The notes: a model not told the origin generated them from the letters alone. DNA of 64,000 bases from Podarcis filfolensis (GCA_964270895.1 OZ185438.1); one strand, 5' to 3'; counted from the first letter of the stretch, positions 3,301 to 16,900 are shown. Program-made: numbers and translations.

Positions 3301-6300
3301 TGAACAATTTCGTATCAACAGCAAACCTGGGAACCTTACTGCTCACACAACCCTCACAAAAAAAGTTAAAAAGCACAGGTCCCAGCATCAGTCCTGCACA
3401 GCACAGAGGGTGTAAGAGCTGCCGCCTGGATCAGGCCATCTAGCCCAGCCTCCGGTTCCCACGTGGCCAACCAGAGGCACAACAGGAGCCCCAGAGCCCT
3501 CTCCCTTCCCGCGGTTTCTAGCAGCTCCCCCAATGGTGGAGGAAGAGGATTGCCATTGTGGCTCCTCTTTAGAGATGGTGGCTGCCATTGCCTCCTGCGA
3601 GAGCCATCGTCTGGCTCTGTGCTGCAGGAAGAACTTTCTTCCATCTGCCCTTCTGACATTCAGCTTCATTGGACATCTATGCGTTTGAGGGTTACGAGAG
3701 AGGGAGAAAGTTTTCCCCTTTCCACTTACCATGTGCCATGTTGCCCCTCACTTTTTGAACTAAAAAGTCCCAAATGCTGTCTCCTTTCCTTGTAAGGGAG
3801 TCGCTCCACCCCCTTAGGGAGCCCCTCCTGAATCTTTTCCAACTCTGCAATAACCTTTTTGAGGGGAGAGGAGGTGCCCAGAACTGTATATCGTTCTTCA
3901 AATGTGGGCACACACCAGATTCCTGAAACGGCATGATGATACTGGCAGTTTTATTCTCAATTCCTTTCCTACTGATCCCTCGCATGCAAATTTCCTTTTT
4001 CATGGCTGCCACACTGGAATACTTTGTACACCCCACAATTGGGAGAACCACCATTTATTCTTACTTCCTGTTTCTTAACCTGTTTCCCACTGATCCCAAA
4101 ATGAAGTTTACCCAAGAATCTTTCATAGAACCAGAATTGTAGGGGCACCCCAAGGGTCCTTTAGTCCAAGCTCCTGCAATGCAGGAATCACAGCTAAAGA
4201 CTCCTGCTTAAAATCCTTCAGTGAAGGAGAGGCCCGTCCCCTGCCCAGGTCTTCTGTTCCACTGTCCAAGGGCTCTTCCTCTCAGCTGCTGGGACCCTAA
4301 GAAAGTTGAGAGCAGCCCCCCCCCCCCCGGGCCAAGACGGTCCTCACTCTGGCATGCCAGGAGTGCGGTTTTTGCTCTGACCCTGCCCTGTGCCTGAGAT
4401 TGTGCTGCCCTTGCAGGAGCCACGGGGAAGTGTTGGCCGGGCTCAGAATCCAGGAGAGGCTGAACTGCCTAACAGAGGGAGCCCAGGAAGCCCTGCAGGA
4501 GCTGGCCGGTATGGACACAGGGCTGAGTGAGGGGTTCAAGGGGACAGCCTGCAAGAGCCAAGGCCTTGAAGGCCCCCTCCGAAACACGGCTGGCTCTTGT
4601 GCCTCTGCAGGGACCATGCTCTACGGGGGCCACATCCTGGACAGCGGTGATGCCCAAGTGGTGCAGAGCCTGTGCCAGGCCTGCTTGGCTCCTGCCTCCC
4701 CCCTGCAGCCAGCCTCCAGCCTCCAGCAGCTTGTGGCCAAAGTCGTCGGCTGCCCCAACCCAGGTGAGAGAAGATCAGACGAGCCGGCTGGGTCCGGCCC
4801 AGCATCCTGTTCTCACTGCGGGAAACCCGCAAGCAGGACTCAAGCCCAAGAGCAACACCCTCCCCGCCTGCGGTTTCCGGCAAGGGGTATTTGGAAGCCT
4901 TGCTTCCTCCAGCTGTGACCATTGTGGGTGGCCATTGTGGGGCCCTTCATGAATTGGCTAATGTCTTTGAAGAGGGCAGGGAAGAGCCTGCCGGTGGGGG
5001 CGCTGGGTGCTCTGCTGATCCCCCTCCCTTTCCTTGCACCCTGTAGGGAACACGGATGAGGAGGCGGCCGCCGCCACCCAGGCCGGCTTCGAGCAGCTGC
5101 CCAGCCCTATGGAGCCTGCCAGGATCGGCCTGTGCAGCGCGCTGCAGCAGCGGATGCTGGCGGAGCGGAGCCAGGCCTTGCTGGTGGCCTTGCAGGCCTC
5201 CCAGGGCCTGTGGCAGCCCTGCCGGGCCCCCTGCCGCCCGCACACAGGTGCCCTGGAGCAGCTGCTGCGGGACGGGATCCGGCTGGTGCAGGATCTGCAG
5301 GAGCAGCTGAGCGAGTGCGGCTGGGAGGTGGGCTGGAAGGGGTGCCCCCCGCAAGGGCAAGCCCGCCCCCGGCCGCGCCCCCTGCAGCGCTTCCTGCTTG
5401 AGGAGGCGGGCATCCTCCTGGCCCTGCTGAAGCAGGTGGGCCGCGACCTGAGCTGCGCCCAGGAGTGCCTGCAGAGGGAGCCCTGCTCCTCCCGCCGCTG
5501 CAGCACCATCCTCTACCACCTGAAGCAGGGCCGCCTGCCCAGCCCCTGGCTGCCCTACGCCCTCACCGGCCCCCAGGCCCCCCCGGCCTGGCTGCAGACG
5601 CTCAAGCAGCGGACCCAGCTCCTGTGCAGCTACCTGGGCTCCATCAGCGGGCCGCTCGTGGCCCACTACCAGCTGGCTGCCTTCCACCAGCCCCGCCGCC
5701 TCCTCCTGGCCGTGCTGCAAGAGAGGGCTCGCGTGGAGAGGCAGGAGCTGCACCGCTACCAGCTGCACCAACAGGTAGGGAGGGGAGGCCGGGCATGGGG
5801 GTGGGCACAGGGGCAAGCCCAGCAGCCCCGGTCCCTGAGCGCCCCCTTTCCCCCTCCCTCTTGCCTTCCTTTGCCAGGTCCTTCCCAGTGGGCCACCCCC
5901 CACCAGCGCCCCCGAGAAAGGCATCTATCTGAGCGGGCTGGAGCTGCGCCATGCCTTTTGGAAGGCCCACAGTGGGCTGCTGCAGGAGAGCCGCACGGCC
6001 GAGCCCTGCCCGCTGCCCACCATCTGGATCCAGGCCGCCCGCCTGACCTGGGACATGGCCTCTGCTGGCACCACCCCCAAGCTCCCAGCCAACAAGTTCC
6101 TGTGCCCCGTCTACCTGGGGGTCCCCGAGGTCCCTGTGGCGCTGGGCAGCCAGCACGTCACCCTGCACCTGAGCCTGCCTTCCAAGATGGCCCCTGAGCT
6201 GTGCCTCCAGCAGCGTGTCCACGCCGTCAGCCTCCTGCACTGGGAGGGGGACAGCAGCACAGGGCAAAGGCAGCACCCTGCCCCCTCCCCCAGAGCCCCC

Positions 6301-6544: not shown

Positions 6545-9500
6545 TCATTTCAGGTCCACGTCAAAATCCAAAACAAGCAGCTTGGTCTCCTCGGTCCCGT
6601 TGCGGCTCCCCACGGCGCACACCAGCTTTGTGTTGGAGGCCCGGATGCGCCAGACCACCCCCCCGCTGCCGCCACTCTCCAGCGCCACCAGGTTGCGCAC
6701 AAACTCGCCCGTCTTGAGGTCCCACAGCTTGACGGTGCCGTCGTCTGAGCTGGTCACCACAAACTTGGAGCTGAACTGGAGGCAGGTGACGGCACTCTGG
6801 TGCTTGCTGGGACCTGCAGAAGGGGGGGCAAAGAAGGTGAGAAGCAGAGATCAGCTGCCATGCCCAGCCACAAGTGCCCAGCCGCCTCTTCCTGGAGGAC
6901 ACCCCTGGTGGCAGGCCTCTGCCCAGAGGGAGAAAAGCCTTCCCCTCCCCAGGACTTTGTGAGGGCCGATGGGGAGTTTCAGGTCCCTGCAGCCCAGCCA
7001 GCTGCCCGCAGCACCCACCTTGCAAGGTCTGCAGACACTGGCCCGTCTTGATGTCCCAGATCTTGACCGTGGAGTCGGCGTTGCCAGAGACCAGGATGTT
7101 GTCGCGCAGCTCCATGCCGCTGGTCAGGGACTGGTGCCCCATCAACGTGTGCAGGCAGTTGCCGCTCTCGGCGTCCCACACGCGGATCGAGGTGTCCAGG
7201 GAGCCACTCACAATGTGGGTCCCATCAAACTGCGCAAGAGAGGGGTGGGAGGAGTGAGGGGCTGTGCGACTCAGGGGATGGGGAGGGAAGGGGTCGGGGT
7301 CCCTCACCTGCAGGGAGTAGACGCGATTGGTGTGGCCTTGCAAGGTGTGGATGCAGCTCTCCGTCTCGGGGTCCCAGACCTTGACCGTGTAGTCGTAGGC
7401 GCCACTCACCACCTTGTGCCCGTCGTACTGGACGCAGCGGACGGCGGCCACATGGCCCATCAGCACGTGCAGGCACTGTCCTGTCTCGATGTCCCAGAGG
7501 CGGAGGGTGGCGTCCCGGGACCCACTCACCACCCTGCCAAGGGAGGAGAGACAAGCAGCTTGAGTCCCAGGCAGGAGGGGCAGGAGGGGTCCCTGGAGCG
7601 ACTTCCCCCCTCCAACCTACCTGCTGCCGTGGAGGTGCATGCAGCGCACGGTGGAGGTGTGCCCGTAGAGGGTGTGCACGCACTCGCCCGTGTCCGCGTT
7701 CCACACCTTGAGGGTGCGGTCTGTTGAGCCGCTGATGACGATGTTGTCCCTCATCTGGGAAGACCAAACGCCCCCCGTGTGCCCCACCAGGGTCTGAACG
7801 CACTGCGGGAGGAGGAGGAAGATGCTCAGAGCCAGGAAGGCGGAGCCACAGCCACCCCCGCCCACAGCACCATTTCCCAGACTCACCTCCCCGGTGACAG
7901 CCGACCACACCTTGAGCGTGTTGTCATCTGAGCCGCTCACAATGCGGTTGCCGCAAAACTGGAGGCAGGTGATGACATGGTCATCGTGGCCCTTCAGAAC
8001 CTGGTCCAGGGAGAGAATTAGCAAGCCAGCCGGCATCACCCTGCACCCCCTTTCTGCGGTTGAGGGAAGGGGCAGCTTCCTCCCCAAGCCCAGGGGCCTT
8101 GAGTTCTCCAAGGCTTGAGACCAGGCCCAGCGGTCAGGAGCTGGCATCAAGCAGGCGGACTTCAAATTCAGCAAGGGCTGGAGGTTCAGCCCCAGTGACA
8201 GCCCCAATTCAAGGAGCAACCAAGTCTCCCCCCCCCCATCCTGCATTTGTGAATAGCCAGAATTATTCTACCTTCTGGATCTCCTTTGCCAGAAGTCAAA
8301 GGTGCTTGCCTGGTCCACCTAGCTCAGCAGCAGCAGCAGCGGCTCACAAGAGTTTGGGGCACATGTCTGTCCCAGCCCACCACTGAGCCCTGGCCCCTGC
8401 CTGGTATAGGACAGGGACTGGGACCCAGCTGGGCACCCAGGCATTGGGTTGCTCTTCCTCCAGAGCCTGCTCTTTGGTCCCCATCGTGCAGCCACCCCGG
8501 AGATCCCAGAGTAGTGTCTTAGCCCATGACCAGGTTCGTAAACCCCGCAGCACGTCACCCCAATGGCGGGGGTCAAGGGTGGTACCTTGGGGGGGCGGGC
8601 ATCCCCGCCACGCCAGTTCATGTCGATTCGGTGCTGCCGCAGGAAGGCCAGTTTCCAGGGGCTGTACATGAAGCCTGGGCTGAGCAGCCGGCGCTTGCGC
8701 AGACTCAGGGGCTCCTCGATACCTGCAGGAGGCAGAAGCGGCTGTGACAGGGAGGAGGCCCAAGGGCAGCCGGGAAGCAACACCGAGCAGGAGCTGAGCC
8801 TCACCTGCATCGCGGCACTTCTCCCGCCACAACAGGTTGTCCTCGGCCAAAATCCGCCAGTAGCGACAGGTCTGCGCCGCCCGGAGCAGGTCCCGTGGCT
8901 CCAGGAACGAGAGCACATAGAGCGCCAACTGCAAAAGGGACAAGATTTCCTCCCATGAAAGGCCTCCCTGGGTGCAAATGGCAAGCCAGGCACGGAGAGC
9001 ATGGGGCTGGGCTGGGCAGCTTCTCGTGTCCACAACAGCAATGTGAAGACTTTGCCATCTAGATGACCTTTCACCCTCACCAGCCGAACATCTGAAGCAG
9101 CCGTCCAATGCTCCTCCAAGAAAAGAGCTGGATCAGAGCCAGGCCTTGGGCAAAGGCCTTTTGGAAAGCCCGTGGTCCACACCTTCCTCCCCCACAGCAG
9201 CTGTCAGGGCCACTGTGGCCACGCAATCCCAAACTGCTTCACAGCCCACAAGGCCTCTCCTGCCTTTCCAATCCAGCACAGAGTCTGCGGCTGAGCTCCC
9301 TGTCCTGACCATCTGGGCCAATCTCTTGCCCTCCAAGCATCCTCCTGCCATTTCTTATTGTCCTCGTTGCCACTCCTGTCTGAGTTGGCTTTCTTTGGAT
9401 GTGTTACAGAGGGCTCCCTATGACACAACTTTTGCTCTAAAAATGGTAGCCTGCACCTCACAAGGGAAGTTCTGCTTTGGCCTGGAGAGGCAGGGAGAGA

Positions 9501-12500
9501 GCGTGCGTTACATTAGCTCACGTACGCGGACGTTCAAGCGAGCTAAATCCATTGACCGCTGTCTCTTCTCTCCCTTGACATCTTTGACAGCCTCCCCTTA
9601 ATGTTTGTATATTTAAAAATTAAGAAAAAGGAGCTTTTGACTGAAAGTGTTCAGCCCATCTGCCACTTATGACAACACCATTAAAAACCATTTAACAATC
9701 ACTTTCAAAAAACCAAGATTTTGTACTCTGCATCTGTTTACATTTTAAAGCCTAATTTGAGCATAAAGCCCAACTTTTGCCTTAGCACCCAGAAATCTTT
9801 TGGATCCCAGAGGCCCTGCCCAATTACCACACACCCACTTTTTCCTCTTCTCCATCACTTTCTGCTGCACATTGAGCAGCTGCCTTGGAGAGACAAGGCC
9901 TGGCACACCCGCCTCTTGTTCTTGGCCAAGCTCTTCTACCCTCCCTCTCTGGGGCTGCTTCGTTCTTCCTCCCTCTTGCAAGGCCCTCTGCTGCTGCTCC
10001 TTCCCTTGCCTGTCTCATTTCTTTTTCTCCTCTTTGGCAGGAACTGAACTCTGGCTCTTAGCTTCTCACCAGGCCTTCAGGTTCTCCGATAACTTTGATT
10101 CTTGCCGTTAAAAGTTTTCCAAGGCCTTGTAATCAAATCAAATAGCTCCTTCTCTGATGTGTCTCATCTCCTGCTAAAGCAACTGGCTCTACTCAATTTT
10201 CCTGCTGGTGCCACATTTGCACTTCAGATAAAGTTCTCTTTTTCCAGTTTCTTTCTGTTACTTCATTCTAGTGTTTCTGTGAGTTTTCATGCACACTTTA
10301 AAAATGTGTAGCTGGTATGAATAGTTCTGACTCTTATTTGTTTTTGACACAGGTAGGTAGCCGTGTTGGTCTGACGCAGTCAAAATTTTAAAAAAAAATG
10401 TCCAATACCGCCTTATAGACCAACTAAGTTTGTTCTGGTATAAGCTTTTGTGTGCATGCACACTTCTTCACTTCTTTTACAACTACCTATCGTGTCCCCT
10501 TGTCACCCCTCTTGACTTTGGCTCAGATTCTGATCTCCTGCCCTGTTGCTAAAGGCTTTCTAACAACACCCTGCAGGCTCATTCTTCCACCAACACCTTC
10601 AGCCAACAACTCCCCACTGTCCTCTCTCGGCTGCCCTGCATTCTTCCTCCAAGGTCCCCCACCCACAAGACACTCACCTCTTTGGGCAGCAGTGATATGA
10701 AATCGCGCTGGAATTGGGGCTCGATCACTTGCATCATGTGCTTGATCTGAGGAGGCTCACAGCGGTCAATGAGCTCATCCAGAGCCAGCAGCTTCTCTGG
10801 GCCGCTCCAGCGCTGGCGGGAGAAAGGAGTAAGGGGAGATCAAGCGCAAAACCCAGGATTGCAGCCCGTCTCTGCGCCAGAACCAAGGCCACAAAGCAGC
10901 CCATAAAAGCAATCAAAGCAAAAGCTTTGTAGCTTTCTAAATGTTGAAACACCACCAATGCATCAGCTCACTTTTAAGATCAAATCCCTAAAACAAAATA
11001 GGAAATGAGAAACACACCACAGCACATCTGCCAAATGCCCGGCTCGTGGAAAAAGGCCTTTGCTGAATGTCGGAAGGTCAGCTGCAAGCCAGCCAGAAAG
11101 CGCAGCCCTGCTCTGCCTCCAGCCGAGGGCCTCATGCATCACACAGACACAGGCGCCTCTGCCTGCCACTCACCTGGAAAGTGCGCAGCCAGTCCTGCAG
11201 CTCAGGGGGTGGTGTCATTGGGGGGACATGCCGGCAGCGCGCCTGGCCTGCCTTGGCGTTTCGCAAATCCCCAAAGGTGGCCGTGGGGCTAGCGACACAG
11301 GGGCCCAGCACTCTGGAGAGGAAGCAAGTATGTCAGGAGAATGCCATGGCCAGGGGCCCAAGTCAAGAGTCCTGCTGGAGACAGACCCCCTGTCTCCCCC
11401 GGCACCTTGCAGGAGCTCCCAAGCGCCACCCGCAACCTTCTCACCTGCCCCTCTCGGAGCCCTTGCACAGCTTCTTGCCAGGCGACTGGGCTCTGCCATC
11501 CGGGCCGCTCTCTGACTTGCGCTTCATCTGCAATGCAAAGAGATGGGGCGGAATGGAGTCACACGGATCCAGGAAAACCTTCAGCTCCACAAGAAGAAAG
11601 GCTATGCAATGCACGCAGTGCCCCCTCCTGATGAACAGCGCCGCATCAGGTCAAGTGGGGCACCCTTCTTGCTGCCTCCACCGCACAGCAGCCATGCCAG
11701 GGCCCCCATGCCTCCCCAAAAGACTGGAAGGCTGAACACTTTCTCTCAGAACACAGATCTACAAACTGTGCTTTGGGACAACAACCTCGTACGGACAGGA
11801 GGTGGGGAATAAAGATGCAGCACGCAGTAGCCCTCTCCCCACCTGACGGCTTTTGCCTTTCATCCTTGGAGCCTTGATGGCCAGAACACACCCAAGAATC
11901 ACAAGAGCCTGCTGGATGAGGCCAATGGCCCATCAAGTAAAGGTAAAGGACCCCAGTTTAAGTCCAGTCAAAGGTGACGATGGGGTGCCGTGCTCATCTC
12001 GCTTCACCCTGAGGGAGCCGGTGTTTGTCCGCAGACAGTTTTTCCAGGTCATGTGGCCAGCAGGACTAAACCGCTTCTGGCACAACTGAACACAGTGACG
12101 GAAATCAGAGCGCACGGAAATGCCATTTACCTTCCTGTCACAGAAGTACCAATTTATGTACTTGCACTGGCATGCTCTCAAACTGCTAAGTTGGCAGAAT
12201 CTGGGACAAAGCAACAGAAGCTCACCCCATTGTGCAGATTCAAAAAGGGATGTGAATGGGAGTGTGGTCTAAACCACACTGACCCTCTTGGGCTTGCTGA
12301 TCAGAAGGCCCGTCCAGTCCAGCCCTCTGTCCCCACAGTGGCCAACCAGATGCCCATTATGGAAACCCCCAGGCACAATCTGTGCCCAAGAACAACACTC
12401 CCCCCACCCCTGGTCATCTGTGGCTTCCAGCATCTGGTTTTCAGAGGCATCGCTGCCTCCTACTGTGCAGGGCAGAGCATGCTTAGCCATGGTGGCTAGT

Positions 12501-13806
12501 TGCCTCCAACAGCCCCTCCTCTATGAATTGCAGACTTAAAATCTGCACAGGAAAAATGTGCTCCGACTTCAAAAATTCCTCCAGTGAGGGGGAAAAAAAG
12601 ATATCATGAACAAGGCATTAAATTTATGCGCTCCAACCCCCTTGTTATGGTCAGCACAGTCCCTTGGCTGCACCCCTGAGAAACGCTTAGCACAAGCATT
12701 TGATGCCACAGACATTTCCAGGAAGAACCTGAAGGTCCTGGCCAGCATCACCCTCTTCTCCTGCCAGCCGCCCTGAGCCAAAGAGAAGACCAAACCGAAA
12801 ACTTGCACAGCCCCCCCCCCCCTCTGATGCCTGGCATGGACACTCTCGGCTGCTGCGCCCCAGAGCCCCGTCCCTTTCTCTGGGCTCCTTTCCCCAGGCA
12901 GCTTCCCAAGGAGAAGCGTCTGCTGGATCTGGCCCATCCCGGGCAGCCGCCTGCTCTGCCGGGGGTCTCCCTCTTCCCGTTCTCCCCCCCGCAGCCCCTT
13001 CTTCACCTTGGGCCGCGTGTGCCGGATGAGGCCGCCGCCCTCCGTCCGCTCCAGGTAGTCGATCCAGCGCTCGTCCACCGTGTAGTAGAAGTAGACGTCG
13101 CCGCCGCCGCCGCCGCTCTCCTCGCCATCGCTGCTGCCGCCGCTCGTCTCATCCTCGGAGTCGGGAGCCCCCGGCGGGCAGGAGCTGCCCGGCTCCTCCT
13201 CCGGCTCCGCCTCGGCCGCCAAGCAGGCCGGCGCCCAGCTCTCCCGCTGACCCGCCGCCTCGTCCGGAGCCTGCGGGGGGAAGCGGGCCGCGGGGTTCAG
13301 CGAGCCTCGGCCCAGCCGCCCGCCCCCCGCCCGGCTTTCTTCCGCCCGCCCCCCGCCCGCCCCGGGGACGCGGGCCAGGGTCGCCGCCAAGCCCACCTCG
13401 GGCGCGGGAGCCGAGGACGACGACGACGACGCCGGGCAGGCGGCAGCGCGGGCGGGCTCCGGCGAGCAGGTCATCCGCTGGCTGTTCAGCTCCAGGATCC
13501 GCGCCGTGATCCCCTTGACGTGCAGCAGGTCGTCCAGGGAGGCGAAGCCCTTCAGCTCCTGGGGGGAGAGGGGCGCCCCGTCACGCACCGAGGGAGGAGA
13601 GGAGCCCCGCGGAAAAGCCCCCCCGCCAGGAGCGGAGCCCCCCCCCCTCGGACGCCTGGGTCCCTCACCTCCCGCTTGCGCACGATGCCCCGGGCCCGGC
13701 GGCGCCCGATGCCGACCAGCGCCCGCTCCAGCTCCGCCACGCAGGCCCGGTTGATGTCCAGCTTGCCCCCGCCGCCGGGGCCCGGCCCGCCCGCCGATCC
13801 CGACAT
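6545..13806 (-). CDS. FBXW7-like: FBXW7-like F-box/WD40 protein with N-terminal HhH domain, predicted 727 aa. Exons (transcript order) 13806-13669, 13558-13397, 13270-13007, 11527-11445, 11312-11174, 10812-10678, 8928-8805, 8722-8586, 8000-7887, 7802-7621, 7533-7308, 7229-7019, 6813-6545 (TGA)
   Basis: Exons 4-13 encode MKRK..., the D domain ([25 protein letters not shown]), the F-box ([20 protein letters not shown]) and WD40 repeats ending [13 protein letters not shown]. Exon sizes 83/139/135/124/137/114/182/226/211/269 match human FBXW7 as recalled (139 vs 142). All sites are GT-AG and the total of 2184 nt is open. Confidence refers to exons 4-13; linkage of exons 1-3 is less certain. Confidence 0.95.
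11934..12245 (-). mobile_element. Sauria-type SINE in FBXW7-like intron 3 (a short + strand 5' fragment follows at about 12262-12310)
   Basis: Characteristic segments aaaggtaaagg...ccagt, gtcatgtggccagca.gactaa.ccgcttctgg, cagagcgcacggaaa.gcc.tttaccttcc and aactgcta.gttggcag. Confidence 0.8.
13007..13806 (-). CDS. Three exons encoding a ComEA/HHH_3-like tandem helix-hairpin-helix domain plus acidic linker; predicted 5' exons of the FBXW7-like gene
   Basis: Spliced translation [32 protein letters not shown]|[31 protein letters not shown] follows the ComEA pattern (ININ.A..EEL..LPGIG...A..IV..R...G.F.S.DDL..VKGIG). All junctions are phase 0, and the last donor (CCCAAG|gtgaag, 13007) is compatible with the phase-0 MKRK exon. 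Confidence 0.8.
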
Positions 13807-13938
13807 CGCTGCTGCCGCCGCCCGGACTCGGCCGGACTGCGCTTGCGCCGGCCACGCACCGCCGCCCCTCCCTCAACTACAGCCCCCAGCAGGCATTGCG
13901 AGACGAGACGAGACACTTCCGCTTCGCGAGAAAAGCGC

Positions 13939-13944
13939 TTTATT
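13939..13944 (-). terminator. RRP8 polyadenylation signal AATAAA
   Basis: tttatt on + strand, 43 bp past the RRP8 stop. Confidence 0.7.
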
Positions 13945-13987
13945 CAGAGCGAGGCGGCGGCCCAGACAAAGCCCCGCCCCCGTGGCG

Positions 13988-16900
13988 TCACCGCCGCTTG
14001 TAGAGGCAGGGGCGGAGCGCCAAGCCCGGAAGAGCCCCTTCGCCCCGCCCCTTCCGCTTCGCCGCTTCCGCCTTGCGCAGCTCGAAGGTGAAGAAGTGGC
14101 TGCCCGTCACGTCCTGCAAGGAGAGGAGAGGGAAGGCGATGCGGAGGCGCGCGCGGGCCGGAAGGGGGCCTGGCGCGGCCCCCGGGAGGGAGGGAACCCC
14201 CCAGCCGAGCGGGAGGAGACCTACCTTGCGGAGGAGCCGGAAGCCGAGCCGGGCCAGCGCCGCCACGAAGGCCCGCACGTCCGGGAAGCGGCTGGCCACC
14301 TCGGCCACCAGGAGGGTCCCCCTGCGAGGAGAGGCGGAGGGAGGGAGATCAGCCACCAAGGGCGGCGGGGGCAGAAAAGACTAACGGGGATGCTGAGTGA
14401 ATCCTCCAGCCGGCAGAAGCATCCCCTGAGCAGGACACCCCCCCCGTGTGTGTCAGGAGGGCAGCTGCAGGACCCGGGAGGGGCTGGGAGACGGCCTGGC
14501 CCCCCAAAGAGAGGGGCCCCAACTGCTATAGGTCATTGTTTTTGCTGGTGCTCTGAGTGGTTACCAATCATGCAATCCTTTCCCCCTAAGCAGTCCAGGG
14601 AATGCTTGCTTATTTTATTATTGCATTTCACATCAGGAAACCTCAGAGGATGCCTCAGAAGCAGCCCCTTCCCACCTTCGGAAATTTAAAATGTCTGTTT
14701 TACAGTATTTCATGTCCTGTAACCCACCCAGAGTGGCTGGGGAAACCCAGCCAGATGGGCGGGATACAAGCAATAAAATTATTATTATTATTACTATTAT
14801 TATTCACAATGATCCAGAGCTGCTGCCTCTGATCCTGTGGCCGACATGTAGCCACTGACAGCCTTCCTTCTCTCTCCAGCAATTCAGACCCAGGGGTCCT
14901 TCTCTGAGCTCTGCCTGGAGCTGCCATGGGTGGGTGTGAGAGGGTGAACCCAAGACCTGCCTGGGAAGTCTGCACTTCCACCAAAGCTCTTCCTCCTCCT
15001 CGCTACTTGTTTTCAAAGGCAATTGATGCAGAGGGCTGATTTTAAAGAATGCAAGTAAACTTTAGATCAGGGGGGCTTCATGCATATTTTCGAGACTGTT
15101 TTGATACTGAAATAGAAAATACACGAATAGTGGTTTTTTCAATATTCAAGTTAGTGCTACTAAGCAGATTTAGCTGATTCACTGCCTCAAGGCTCTTTGC
15201 AACCATCATTAATTCATTGTCTGAATATTAATAAATGTATATTAACATAATCCTTTATTTTAGTAATATCTTTTGTTTAAGTTGTTGTTATTTCAGTTTT
15301 CTGTACAACGCTTAAAAATATTCTAACTATATCTCTATTAATATATTAGTAATATTTTAATATTTCTGACTGGAAAACCCAGTCAGATGGGCAGAGTATT
15401 ATTATCATTATTATTATTAAGCAGTATAGGTATTAAATATCATCATCCCCATATGACAGCCATAGGTTTTGACTGAGCTGGCAGTGCCCTGATCAGCCAC
15501 TTCACGTGTCCCCCTCACTGCCACAGCCCCTCCCATGCCAGTGAGCCCAGGACCCCACAATTACCCAACTCGTAGCACACGGTTGGCCTCTTCCAAGATC
15601 TCCTGCAGGTTAGTACCCATCAGTGCCAGGCAGAACACAGCCACGTCAACAGATTCATCATCCAGGGGGACCTGCACAGAAGGAGCAAAAAGGGAGGCGC
15701 AGTTGGAAAACCATGTGTGTCAGGTAGTCATAGAAGCATAGAACTGTGGAGCTGGGAGGGACACCCAAGGGCCATCTAGTCTAATCCCCTGGAATGTAGG
15801 AATCACACTCAATGTATCCCTGACACGTGGCTGTCCAAGCTCTGCTTAAAAGCCTCCAGTGAAGCAAAGCCCACCTGCATGGGCTGATCACACAGCAGTG
15901 CCCAAGCCTGGAGAAGGCAGGTGCTGTGAGAAGGCCCTCCCCCCAACGTACCTGGGCCATGTCGCAGACAATGACTCGGGGGTCCAGAGCCACCAGGTCA
16001 AAACAGTGCACTTTGTTCCGCACGCTGCGTGCCAGCATGCAGTCCCCGCAACCGAAATCTGCCACCACAAGTGATGCTGGTCTGTGGGGGGAGGGGCAAA
16101 GTTAGACCGTGCACCCATCCTGTCAAACACTTCTATACGTTAACTATGACATTGCAACATGCGCAAATGTTTGCTTAACCAGCACATGTTGAAGGGGGGG
16201 AGCTGGCCAACCCCCCCCCCCATCCTTACCTCTGGCGCAGGTAGCACACAAAGCGCTGCACGGGGTTTTCAGGCCACTGGGCCACCTGCCGGGCAAAGCC
16301 CCGGTGATACACTGCCAAGGCCTCAGGGTCATCCTGGAAGAGCTGGACTGCCTGCTGGCTGGAGGATGTGTAGAGCTGCTGGTTGATGAAGCGGAAGCGC
16401 GCTGACTCCAGCCGCTCCTCCATGCGCAGCCGCAGGGATGCTGCCCTCTCGCTGAGAAGTTCCTGGCCTGCTGGATCTTCCTGGCTGCTGGGGGGCTCCT
16501 CTGCTGCTGCAGGGACTGCAGAGGCCACAGGGGGCTTCTCGCGGCCCAGCCCTGCCTTGAACCTGTTCTGGCGACGCTTGTTCTTCTGGCGGTTCTTCCA
16601 CTGTCTCCTGGTCAGCCGCTGCCTTGGCTCCTCCTCTGGGTCCTTTGCCCCAGCGCTCCTCTGCTTGCTGCTGGGCTCAGGGTCTCCGCCTCCAGCTGCC
16701 TTGTCTGGACAGGGCAAGGACAGAGGTGCTTAGCTCTGGGCTCCATCGCCCCCCCCCCTGCCGGCCCAGATGATCGCTCTAGTCCGGGGCTCTGTGCACT
16801 GACTGCTGGTGGCAACAGCCCACCGGGGTTCCAGGCAGAGGGACCAGCCCCACCCCACCTGGAGAGGCCCCCAGGGACTGAGATGCAGGGAAGGCTTCAC

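What the first reader, a model, noticed from the sequence alone, without database searches (positions are those of the whole stretch)
13007..13806. ComEA-like HhH DNA-binding domain apparently fused to an FBXW7-type SCF substrate receptor
Seen: three phase-0 exons encode a tandem HhH (LVGIG and VKGIT hairpins), a low-complexity acidic linker, and end at a donor compatible with the MKRK exon, exactly where FBXW7 alpha/beta/gamma first exons splice in. I found no minus-strand AATAAA/ATTAAA between 13007 and 11527 and no other credible coding first exon. Known: (HhH)2 folds bind DNA without sequence specificity (ComEA, EEPD1); human FBXW7 isoforms have no such domain; FBXW7-alpha acts at double-strand breaks. 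Inference: a DNA-tethered ubiquitin-ligase receptor that could degrade phospho-substrates directly on chromatin or damaged DNA. I do not know of a characterised protein with this architecture; novelty needs a database check.
Basis: partly seen in the sequence, partly recalled or inferred. Interest (0 to 1): 0.95.

Follow-up and report, generated by a model that had tools for sequence, protein, structure and literature searches.

The report
DNA-binding-type domain on a second FBXW7
The three exons are the real, expressed 5' coding exons of a second FBXW7 gene, which puts a ComEA/EEPD1-type helix-hairpin-helix domain on an SCF ubiquitin-ligase receptor; the design is conserved from sharks to birds, was not found in placental or marsupial mammals, sits in databases only as automatic predictions, and turned up in no paper I could find.

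Summary

- **Exons.** 13806-13669, 13558-13397 and 13270-13007 (minus strand) are intact, phase 0 and bounded by GT/AG.
- **Splicing.** Assembled RNA contigs from three runs, three studies and two related species join 13007 directly to the MKRK exon at 11527. One contig carries exons 1 to 6.
- **Model.** The 13-exon, 727-aa protein is 100% identical to Podarcis muralis "FBXW7" A0A670HUM6 over 544 aligned columns of the common part.
- **Domain.** Orthologues score 47-49 bits on Pfam HHH_3 (cut-off 27). The domain alone folds at pLDDT 93.7 and superposes on ComEA at 0.8 Å.
- **Distribution.** The same N-terminus occurs in squamates, turtles, birds, a caecilian, a newt, a lungfish, sharks, rays and a chimaera. 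It has four parts: HhH domain, variable linker, acidic run, invariant aromatic motif. Platypus keeps only the HhH part.
- **Paralogy.** In a tree these proteins form a clade (100/99) separate from canonical FBXW7 of the same species.
- **Substrate pocket.** The F-box/WD40 part is close to human FBXW7 (935 bits), and Arg465, Arg479 and Arg505 are kept.

The architecture is therefore already in databases under automatic names. Five literature searches found no study of it. DNA tethering is inferred, not shown. The scan's two other notes on this window cover the same gene; none concerns other DNA.

The parts
13669..13806 (-). Coding exon 1 of the FBXW7-like gene. It runs from the ATG at 13806 through a Gly/Pro-rich start, the first HhH hairpin (LVGIG) and the basic [12 protein letters not shown] helix.
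   Evidence: Translation. Pfam HHH_3 profile positions 5-35, E 7.9e-5. GT donor. Joint 13557/13668 (cut +1) in RNA contigs of X8 and X1.
13397..13558 (-). Coding exon 2: the second HhH hairpin (VKGIT) and the start of the variable linker.
   Evidence: Translation. Pfam HHH_3 profile positions 38-61. AG/GT boundaries. Covered by X8 contig record 21.
13271..13396 (-). Intron 2, 126 nt, in frame and without a stop. It can be read either as an intron or as extra linker.
   Evidence: The ORF 12569-13876 reads through it. A joint near 13272/13405 is seen in the X8 contig. It is kept as coding in the Podarcis muralis models P0182 and P0196.
13007..13270 (-). Coding exon 3: the acidic low-complexity linker, then the conserved aromatic motif [20 protein letters not shown]...LIRHTRPK, then a phase-0 donor.
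   Evidence: Translation. Motif columns are invariant in 14 orthologues. The motif is predicted as a beta-hairpin at pLDDT 72-84.
11528..13006 (-). Intron 3, 1479 nt. It carries a dispersed repeat at about 11849-12439 and has no AATAAA or ATTAAA.
   Evidence: Joint 11527/13007 'skips 1479, CT..AC' in X8, X1 and X14, with very high contig depth over 11849-12439. Poly(A)-signal scan.
11445..11527 (-). Exon 4, the MKRK exon. It is the first exon shared with the canonical FBXW7 layout. Its Met could start an HhH-less isoform of 539 aa.
   Evidence: Joints 11527/13007 and 11312/11445. Contigs that read unspliced from 11445 up to about 12040 in X25, X1 and X8 (table 8).
6545..11312 (-). Exons 5-13 of the FBXW7-like gene: 11312-11174, 10812-10678, 8928-8805, 8722-8586, 8000-7887, 7802-7621, 7533-7308, 7229-7019 and 6813-6545. 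They encode the dimerisation domain, the F-box and the eight-blade WD40 propeller.
   Evidence: All introns are GT-AG and the CDS is an intact 2184 nt. Joints for exons 4 to 8 appear in RNA contigs. The Sceloporus orthologue scores 935 bits against human FBXW7 chain 7t1y_B, and the window's translation carries the same Arg-triad motifs.
13807..13944 (-). The short gap between the upstream gene's poly(A) signal (AATAAA, 13944-13939) and the FBXW7-like ATG. This is the 5'UTR and promoter zone, and it holds an upstream ATG near 13896.
   Evidence: X1 contig record 5 runs unbroken from 14112 to 13799. The upstream ORF matches Pfam Methyltransf_8, the RRP8 family.

Best explanation
Shown. Positions 13806-13007 hold the three 5' coding exons of a second FBXW7 gene, here called FBXW7L. 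It is a paralogue of canonical FBXW7 that arose before the split of cartilaginous and bony vertebrates. The exons are spliced to the MKRK exon and yield a 727-aa protein. Its parts, in order, are: a ComEA/EEPD1-type (HhH)2 domain (residues about 14-72); a variable linker; an acidic run; an invariant aromatic motif ([21 protein letters not shown]); and an FBXW7-type dimerisation domain, F-box and WD40 propeller with the phosphodegron-binding arginines intact.

Inferred. The protein assembles with SKP1-CUL1 like FBXW7 and recognises the same kind of phosphorylated degron. The (HhH)2 domain, present twice per dimer, contacts the DNA backbone without sequence preference. This would concentrate the ligase on chromatin, where typical FBXW7 substrates sit (DNA-bound transcription factors, replication and repair factors). 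The acidic run probably competes with DNA for the basic HhH surface and so tunes the binding. The conserved aromatic hairpin is a docking element whose partner is unknown.
For: Splicing. The joint 11527/13007 has GT..AG ends on the minus strand in contigs of X8 (depth 40.5), X1 (74.5) and X14 (45.4, a second species). X14 record 6 (1802 nt) runs from exon 8 into exon 3. X8 record 21 (890 nt) carries exons 6 to 1. Intronic contigs are 5-10 times shallower.

Gene model. Thirteen exons, all GT-AG, 727 aa.

Architecture elsewhere. HHH_3 + F-box + WD40 proteins are annotated in squamates, turtles, birds, a caecilian, a newt, a lungfish, platypus, sharks, rays and a chimaera. The N-terminal layout is conserved down to cartilaginous fishes.

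Domain. HHH_3 scores 47-49 bits against a cut-off of 27. A profile of the N-terminus hits EEPD1 at 5e-13, ComEA at 2e-7 and KIF22 at 2.5e-3. The AF2 model has pLDDT 93.7, and Foldseek places ComEA 8dss first with TM 0.82 and rmsd 0.8 Å.

Paralogy. FBXW7L and canonical FBXW7 form separate clades, each at 100/99 and each with cartilaginous and lobe-finned members.

Ligase part. 935 bits to human FBXW7, with STVRC, SGSRD and AAVRC kept.
Against: No DNA-binding, localisation or ligase data exist for this protein. The second hairpin reads G-I-T rather than G-h-G. The two (HhH)2 domains of EEPD1, tested alone, did not bind DNA and needed a dimer with four such units (PMC12988330). FBXW7L would offer only two per dimer. 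The RNA evidence consists of assembled contigs, not single reads or full-length molecules. One run (X25) holds the gene's later exons but none of the HhH exons, so HhH-less isoforms probably exist. The basic helix could simply be a nuclear localisation signal.
Confidence: 0.7

Rival explanations
1. The fusion protein is real, but the HhH domain does not tether it to DNA. It would serve as a localisation or protein-interaction module, in the way the alternative first exons of mammalian FBXW7 alpha, beta and gamma set the compartment. The [12 protein letters not shown] helix would act as a nuclear or nucleolar signal.
For: The isolated (HhH)2 units of EEPD1 do not bind DNA (PMC12988330). The second hairpin is G-I-T. 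A long acidic run follows that could mask the basic surface. HhH folds also serve in non-DNA roles, for example PsbU of photosystem II among the Foldseek hits.
Against: The best structural and sequence matches are DNA binders: ComEA, EEPD1, KIF22 and Tex. Eighteen of the 70 domain columns are invariant from hagfish to birds, including both hairpin glycines and the basic residues after hairpin 1. That is stronger conservation than a simple NLS would need.
Confidence: 0.22
2. The exons mainly make a separate small HhH protein of about 190-330 aa, from transcripts that keep intron 3 or end within it. On this view the join to FBXW7L is a minor product.
For: The frame stays open for 145 codons past the donor at 13007. 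Short ORFs that read 'RPKV...' into the intron exist in public assemblies of several species, such as P0025, P0027 and P0056. The hagfish has a 309/343-aa HhH + acidic protein that is not joined to FBXW7 in its annotation.
Against: The spliced joint is the deeper form in three runs, and depth in intron 3 next to exon 3 is near zero in X8 and X1. There is no poly(A) signal in the intron. The phase-0 donor and the residues RPK|MKRK are conserved from sharks to birds. The read-through tails share no conservation.
Confidence: 0.04
3. The HhH exons are mostly used in read-through transcripts from the upstream RRP8 gene. These would splice from an RRP8 exon into exon 2, skip exon 1 and break the HhH domain.
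For: NCBI models named 'RRP8 isoform X...' with exactly this join exist in many birds and in Podarcis muralis: P0007, P0026 and P0196. Only about 130 nt separate the RRP8 poly(A) signal from the ATG. One X1 contig runs unbroken from the RRP8 last exon into exon 1.
Against: The listed joints include exon 1 to exon 2 (13557/13668) in X8 and X1, and the normal RRP8 last intron (14112/14224), but no RRP8-to-exon-2 joint. However, 16 joints were not shown. Exon 1 is as conserved as exon 2 in all clades.
Confidence: 0.04

Closest known systems
Human FBXW7 (SCF-FBXW7 substrate receptor; isoforms alpha, beta, gamma)
   Same: It has the same gene layout, with isoform-specific 5' exons spliced in phase 0 to the exon that starts MKRK. 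It has the same dimerisation domain, F-box and eight-blade WD40 propeller. An orthologue scores 935 bits to chain 7t1y_B, and the three substrate-binding arginines are kept.
   Different: FBXW7L is a separate paralogue clade, not the orthologue. Its N-terminal exons encode a folded (HhH)2 domain. From my own knowledge of the three human first exons, none encodes such a domain. The gene lies between an RRP8-like gene and a gene whose ORF matches Pfam Dynein_C. No therian member appeared in the searches.
EEPD1 N-terminal (HhH)2 domains
   Same: It is the best sequence match among solved structures: 5e-13, with both EEPD1 HhH units aligning. It is a vertebrate nuclear protein whose flexibly tethered (HhH)2 units engage dsDNA in a dimer (PMC12988330).
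   Different: EEPD1 has two (HhH)2 units per chain and an EEP-fold domain. FBXW7L has one unit and no EEP domain. The EEPD1 units alone did not bind DNA.
Bacterial ComEA (competence DNA receptor), Pfam HHH_3
   Same: Same fold: 8dss_B at TM 0.82, rmsd 0.8 Å and 38% identity; 2duy at rmsd 0.7 Å. Same Pfam family, above the gathering score.
   Different: ComEA is a small periplasmic or membrane-anchored protein that takes up DNA. Here the domain is the N-terminus of a eukaryotic ubiquitin-ligase receptor. The second hairpin is GIT rather than GIG.
KIF22 (Kid) C-terminal HhH domain
   Same: It is another vertebrate case of a ComEA-like HhH domain attached to a non-nucleic-acid machine so that it holds DNA or chromosomes (2edu: sequence E 2.5e-3; Foldseek rank 3; paper listed).
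   Different: It is joined to a kinesin motor rather than an F-box protein, and it sits at the C-terminus.

Membership tests
Pfam HHH_3 / ComEA-type (HhH)2 domain | Sequence match to the family model above its curated cut-off | tested here: met
   Orthologue N-termini score 46.7-49.2 bits against a cut-off of 27. The window's exon 1 and exon 2, scanned separately, match adjoining halves of the model at 23.1 and 14 bits. The spliced window protein itself could not be submitted by reference.
Pfam HHH_3 / ComEA-type (HhH)2 domain | Compact helical fold with two helix-hairpin-helix motifs | tested here: met
   The AF2 model of the Podarcis domain, which differs from the window's by one residue, has pLDDT 93.7 and pTM 0.83. 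Foldseek places ComEA 8dss and 2duy on top at rmsd 0.7-0.8 Å and TM 0.76-0.82.
Pfam HHH_3 / ComEA-type (HhH)2 domain | G-hydrophobic-G hairpins followed by basic residues | tested here: inconclusive
   Hairpin 1 is G-I-G followed by RRR and is invariant. Hairpin 2 is G-I-T in nearly all species, G-V-T in a few and G-I-G only in hagfish.
Pfam HHH_3 / ComEA-type (HhH)2 domain | Sequence-independent binding of double-stranded DNA | not testable with these tools
   This needs EMSA or anisotropy. The closest eukaryotic relative, EEPD1, needs several units for stable binding.
FBXW7 family (CDC4/Ago/SEL-10 type F-box WD40 receptors) | F-box | tested here: met
   F-box-like PF12937 scores 57.5-60.3 bits against a cut-off of 24.3 in orthologues. 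The window's exons translate to the same sequence.
FBXW7 family (CDC4/Ago/SEL-10 type F-box WD40 receptors) | WD40 propeller with the phosphodegron-binding arginine triad (human R465, R479, R505) | tested here: met
   Alignment to 7t1y_B and 2ovp_B. The motifs STVRC, SGSRD and AAVRC are present in the window model. Residue numbers are mapped by assuming that chain 2ovp_B spans residues 263-707, which its length of 445 fits.
FBXW7 family (CDC4/Ago/SEL-10 type F-box WD40 receptors) | Orthology to FBXW7 proper | tested here: not met
   The tree puts the window with 17 'FBXW7-like' proteins in a clade (100/99) apart from 15 canonical FBXW7, including those of the same species. It is a paralogue.
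EEPD1 | EEP (endonuclease/exonuclease/phosphatase) domain after the HhH units | tested here: not met
   There is no such domain. The Pfam scan of the N-termini returns only HhH families and one weak chance match. The top-25 lists for the full-length proteins show only WD40-type and F-box families. The window model is F-box plus WD40.

The most novel reading that the evidence does not exclude
Early jawed vertebrates split FBXW7 function between two genes. One is a freely diffusing receptor, canonical FBXW7. The other is a DNA-tethered receptor, FBXW7L, that clears phosphorylated transcription, replication or repair factors directly on chromatin. Therian mammals lost the tethered gene, and possibly frogs and ray-finned fishes did too. 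If so, part of what FBXW7-alpha does on chromatin in mammals would be taken-over work, and sharks, reptiles and birds would have an unstudied second copy of a major tumour-suppressor pathway.
Probability: 0.35. Interest if true: 0.75.

Novelty: new variant of a known kind. Interest (0 to 1): 0.6.

Why it matters
FBXW7 is one of the most studied tumour-suppressor ubiquitin-ligase receptors, and almost all the work is on mammals, which have one gene. This locus and its relatives show that many other jawed vertebrates have a second gene with a nearly identical substrate pocket. They include standard models such as birds, lizards, turtles and newts. The main N-terminus of this second gene is a folded domain of a DNA-binding type.

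Three consequences follow.
- FBXW7 knock-outs or substrate studies in such species may be buffered or confounded by the paralogue.
- The gene offers a natural test of whether tethering an SCF receptor to DNA changes which substrates are degraded, and where.
- Many bird annotations name this gene "RRP8 isoform X", which hides it.

The domain combination itself is easy to test with a recombinant domain and a tagged protein.

Tried and rejected
- **Foldseek on the whole 214-aa N-terminal model.** It gave only weak hits (best E 1.6), because most of the chain is disordered. It was repeated on the domain alone, with a clear result.
- **Exhaustive profile search of the N-terminus.** It was swamped by bacterial proteins with tandem HhH repeats. 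The library holds one protein per 50% cluster, so full-length FBXW7L proteins are probably represented there by canonical FBXW7. It returned only fragments, read-through models and a hagfish protein.
- **Lungfish N-terminus search.** It missed the shark and ray proteins that later found. A blank for ray-finned fishes, frogs, crocodilians or therians in that search is therefore weak evidence. ranks the paralogue above canonical FBXW7 and gives better, though still not conclusive, evidence of absence.
- **Literature.** Five searches found nothing on this paralogue. Hits for 'FBXW7L' appear unrelated, judging by their titles (mouse and cancer studies); I did not open them. PMC2446394 mentions only canonical Fbxw7 as a synteny marker.
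- **Atlas feature search.** It only repeated 'HHH_3 / ComEA-like'.
- **Separate small gene.** Considered and rejected as the main product; see the rival explanations.
- **Origin of the HhH exons.** The scores for EEPD1 and ComEA are too close to decide.

Full report
**1. What is in the sequence**

On the minus strand an upstream gene ends at about 13990. Its last exons match Pfam Methyltransf_8, the RRP8 family, and its AATAAA lies at 13944-13939.

About 130 nt further on, an ATG at 13806 opens three exons: 13806-13669 (46 codons), 13558-13397 (54 codons) and 13270-13007 (88 codons). All are in phase 0, with AG acceptors and GT donors.

- Exon 1 matches Pfam HHH_3 profile positions 5-35 and exon 2 matches positions 38-61, so a single domain is split by intron 1.
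- Exon 3 is an acidic low-complexity stretch that ends in [20 protein letters not shown]...LIRHTRPK.
- The next coding exon starts exactly at 11527 with MKRK, behind an AG.
- No AATAAA or ATTAAA lies on this strand between the two.

**2. Are the exons joined to the FBXW7-like gene?**

Four runs were then laid on 8500-14400. They are kept as assembled contigs, so they show presence rather than quantity.

- The joint 11527/13007 ("skips 1479, CT..AC", which is GT..AG on the minus strand) is present in X8, X1 and X14. These come from three studies and two related species.
- X14 record 6 (1802 nt) runs through exons 8, 7, 6, 5 and 4 into exon 3.
- X8 record 21 (890 nt) runs from exon 6 through exons 5, 4, 3, 2 and 1, to about 35 nt upstream of the ATG.
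- Contigs that carry intron 3 sequence next to the MKRK exon exist in X1, X8 and X25, but at 5-10 times lower depth in X1 and X8.
- All eight listed indels between 13099 and 13813 that separate the related species' contigs from the window are multiples of three: seven in exons 1-3 and one just upstream of the ATG.

X25 is the run with most of the later exons. It shows none of the HhH exons. Instead it has a contig that reads unspliced from the MKRK exon up to about 12040. That suggests an HhH-less form starting at the MKRK methionine, although the tool warns that a hole proves nothing.

**3. The gene model**

The RNA joints and tblastn of orthologues give 13 exons, all GT-AG, and a 2184-nt CDS encoding 727 aa.

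From the MKRK exon onward the protein is 100% identical over 544 aligned columns to Podarcis muralis UniProt A0A670HUM6 (P0182). The window therefore comes from a Podarcis-like lacertid. The indels in the X8 contig match those of the P. muralis protein.

**4. Database check of the architecture**

Searches with the window's exons 2-3, with the lungfish N-terminus and with the lungfish middle region returned more than 40 proteins of about 690-780 aa that carry PF12836 (HHH_3), an F-box and WD40 repeats. [quoted passage not shown] They come from:

- lizards, geckos and snakes;
- turtles;
- many birds;
- a caecilian and a newt;
- the lungfish Protopterus;
- platypus;
- a sawshark, a sawfish, an electric ray and the chimaera Callorhinchus (V9KHD6).

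Alignment shows one conserved plan:

- an HhH domain with 18 of 70 columns invariant from hagfish to birds;
- a linker that varies freely in length and sequence;
- an acidic run;
- an aromatic motif that is invariant in bony vertebrates ([16 protein letters not shown]) and recognisably related in cartilaginous fishes (YYYFV..KKWMDLVQEAQ);
- RPK|MKRK at the splice.

A hagfish protein of 309/343 aa has the HhH domain and an acidic region but is not joined to FBXW7 in its annotation. The platypus model keeps the HhH domain but looks degenerate after it and sits on a long branch.

**5. A paralogue, not FBXW7 itself**

I built a maximum-likelihood tree of 34 proteins, cut to the shared part where the conserved TFGDL motif could be found and then column-filtered. 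It separates 18 FBXW7-like proteins, the window among them, from 15 canonical FBXW7 proteins, with 100/99 support for each side. Both clades contain cartilaginous fishes and lobe-finned vertebrates. Several species appear in both clades: Protopterus, Pristis, Crotalus, Podarcis and Chrysemys.

The duplication therefore predates the jawed-vertebrate radiation, which fits the scan's note s1-302356. In the ranking the paralogue scores 75-88% identity to the lungfish protein, against about 70% for canonical FBXW7. No ray-finned fish, frog, crocodilian or therian sequence fell in the upper group. That is suggestive of loss but not proof.

The window places the gene between the RRP8-like gene and a convergent ORF with a dynein heavy-chain C-terminal domain. 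From memory, RRP8 and DNHD1 are neighbours in human 11p15.4 with no F-box gene between them. I did not test this.

**6. The domain**

- Orthologue N-termini score 46.7-49.2 bits on HHH_3 against a cut-off of 27.
- A profile of the N-terminus finds EEPD1 (9yi2, 5e-13, both of its HhH units), ComEA (8dss at 2e-7, 8dfk, 2duy), the KIF22 C-terminal domain (2.5e-3) and TEFM among solved structures.
- The domain alone folds with pLDDT 93.7 and pTM 0.83.
- Foldseek puts ComEA first: 8dss_B at TM 0.82, rmsd 0.8 Å and 38% identity, and 2duy at rmsd 0.7 Å. KIF22, Tex, PsbU, PolC, TEFM and XPF follow.
- In the 214-aa model, the linker is disordered and the aromatic motif forms a short beta-hairpin at pLDDT 72-84.

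Hairpin 1 is G-I-G followed by RRR. Hairpin 2 is G-I-T, a departure from the usual G-h-G.

**7. The ligase part**

The shared region of the Sceloporus orthologue scores 935 bits against human FBXW7 chain 7t1y_B. The window's own translation carries STVRC, SGSRD and AAVRC, the positions of R465, R479 and R505. PMC5792591 names these three arginines as critical for substrate recognition (abstract seen). It is reasonable to expect SKP1 binding, dimerisation and phosphodegron recognition like those of FBXW7.

**8. How it most likely works**

Shown:
- the transcript;
- the protein architecture and its age;
- the fold class of the N-terminal domain;
- the intact substrate pocket.

Inferred:
- the (HhH)2 domain contacts the DNA backbone, and two copies per dimer give some avidity;
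- the ligase is thereby concentrated on chromatin;
- the acidic run modulates the contact;
- the aromatic hairpin docks to an unknown partner.

The main caution comes from EEPD1, the nearest eukaryotic relative. Its (HhH)2 units alone did not bind DNA, and four units in a dimer were needed (PMC12988330). I therefore give a sizeable share to the rival view that the domain is a localisation or protein-contact module. A separate small HhH protein and RRP8 read-through forms may exist as minor products, but they do not explain the conservation of exon 1 or of the RPK|MKRK junction.

**9. Novelty and score**

The architecture is not new to databases. NCBI, Ensembl and UniProt pipelines predict it in dozens of species, with the HHH_3 hit already computed. 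In many birds the gene is mislabelled as an RRP8 isoform because of read-through models.

Five full-text searches found no paper that describes a second FBXW7 gene or an HhH-bearing F-box protein. The library lacks most subscription journals, so this is not proof.

I rate it a new variant of a known kind: an FBXW7-family receptor with a folded domain of a DNA-binding type, old and conserved but unstudied. Interest is 0.6. The finding is real, would surprise many people who work on FBXW7 and is directly testable. Its function remains inferred, and the gene is already catalogued.

Noticed in passing
window 13271-13396 (minus): Intron 2 is 126 nt, in frame and free of stops. One RNA contig (X8) splices it out, but both public Podarcis muralis models (P0182, P0196) translate it as 42 extra linker residues. 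Both forms would keep the frame.
   Followed up: partly
window 11445-12040 (minus): Contigs in X25, X1 and X8 read unspliced from the MKRK exon into intron 3 and stop at a repeat. X25 shows no HhH exons at all. This may be an alternative start that gives a 539-aa HhH-less isoform beginning at the MKRK methionine, or it may be unprocessed RNA.
   Followed up: partly
window 13799-14225 (minus); proteins P0007, P0026, P0196: Many bird models and one Podarcis model named 'RRP8 isoform X' join an RRP8 exon to HhH exon 2, skipping exon 1. In the window only about 130 nt separate the RRP8 poly(A) signal from the ATG, and an X1 contig runs unbroken from the RRP8 last exon into exon 1. The naming hides the FBXW7-like gene in those annotations.
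   Followed up: partly
window 11849-12439 and 10273-10469: Both stretches have very high summed contig depth in all four RNA runs (thousands to tens of thousands), with many loose ends and variant joints. This is typical of a dispersed repeat or transposable element inside introns 3 and 6.
   Followed up: no
window 5034-6197 (plus): An ORF matches Pfam Dynein_C (E 1.1e-13). It suggests a dynein-heavy-chain-domain gene that ends tail to tail with the FBXW7-like gene. This would be a useful synteny anchor for asking where the gene was lost in mammals.
   Followed up: partly
proteins P0112 / P0174 (Myxine glutinosa): The hagfish has a 309/343-aa protein with the same HhH domain (GIG in both hairpins) and a long acidic region. 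It is annotated as 'TFIID subunit 11-like' and is not joined to FBXW7. It may be the unfused ancestral state, an incomplete model, or a short isoform.
   Followed up: no
protein P0202 (Ornithorhynchus anatinus): The platypus 'FBXW7' model of 925 aa keeps an intact HhH domain. It lacks the aromatic motif and a recognisable MKRK exon, and it sits on a very long branch (0.46). The cause could be a decaying gene or a poor model from GC-rich sequence.
   Followed up: no
window about 13746-13748 (minus), codon 21: The window and Podarcis muralis read NRAC where most other species read NRAG and a few read S or N. This is a lineage-specific Gly-to-Cys change at the start of the first HhH helix.
   Followed up: no
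window about 13896 (minus): An upstream ATG opens a 7-codon ORF (MPAGGCS, then a stop) between the RRP8 poly(A) signal and the main ATG. It would be a uORF if transcription starts upstream of it.
   Followed up: no
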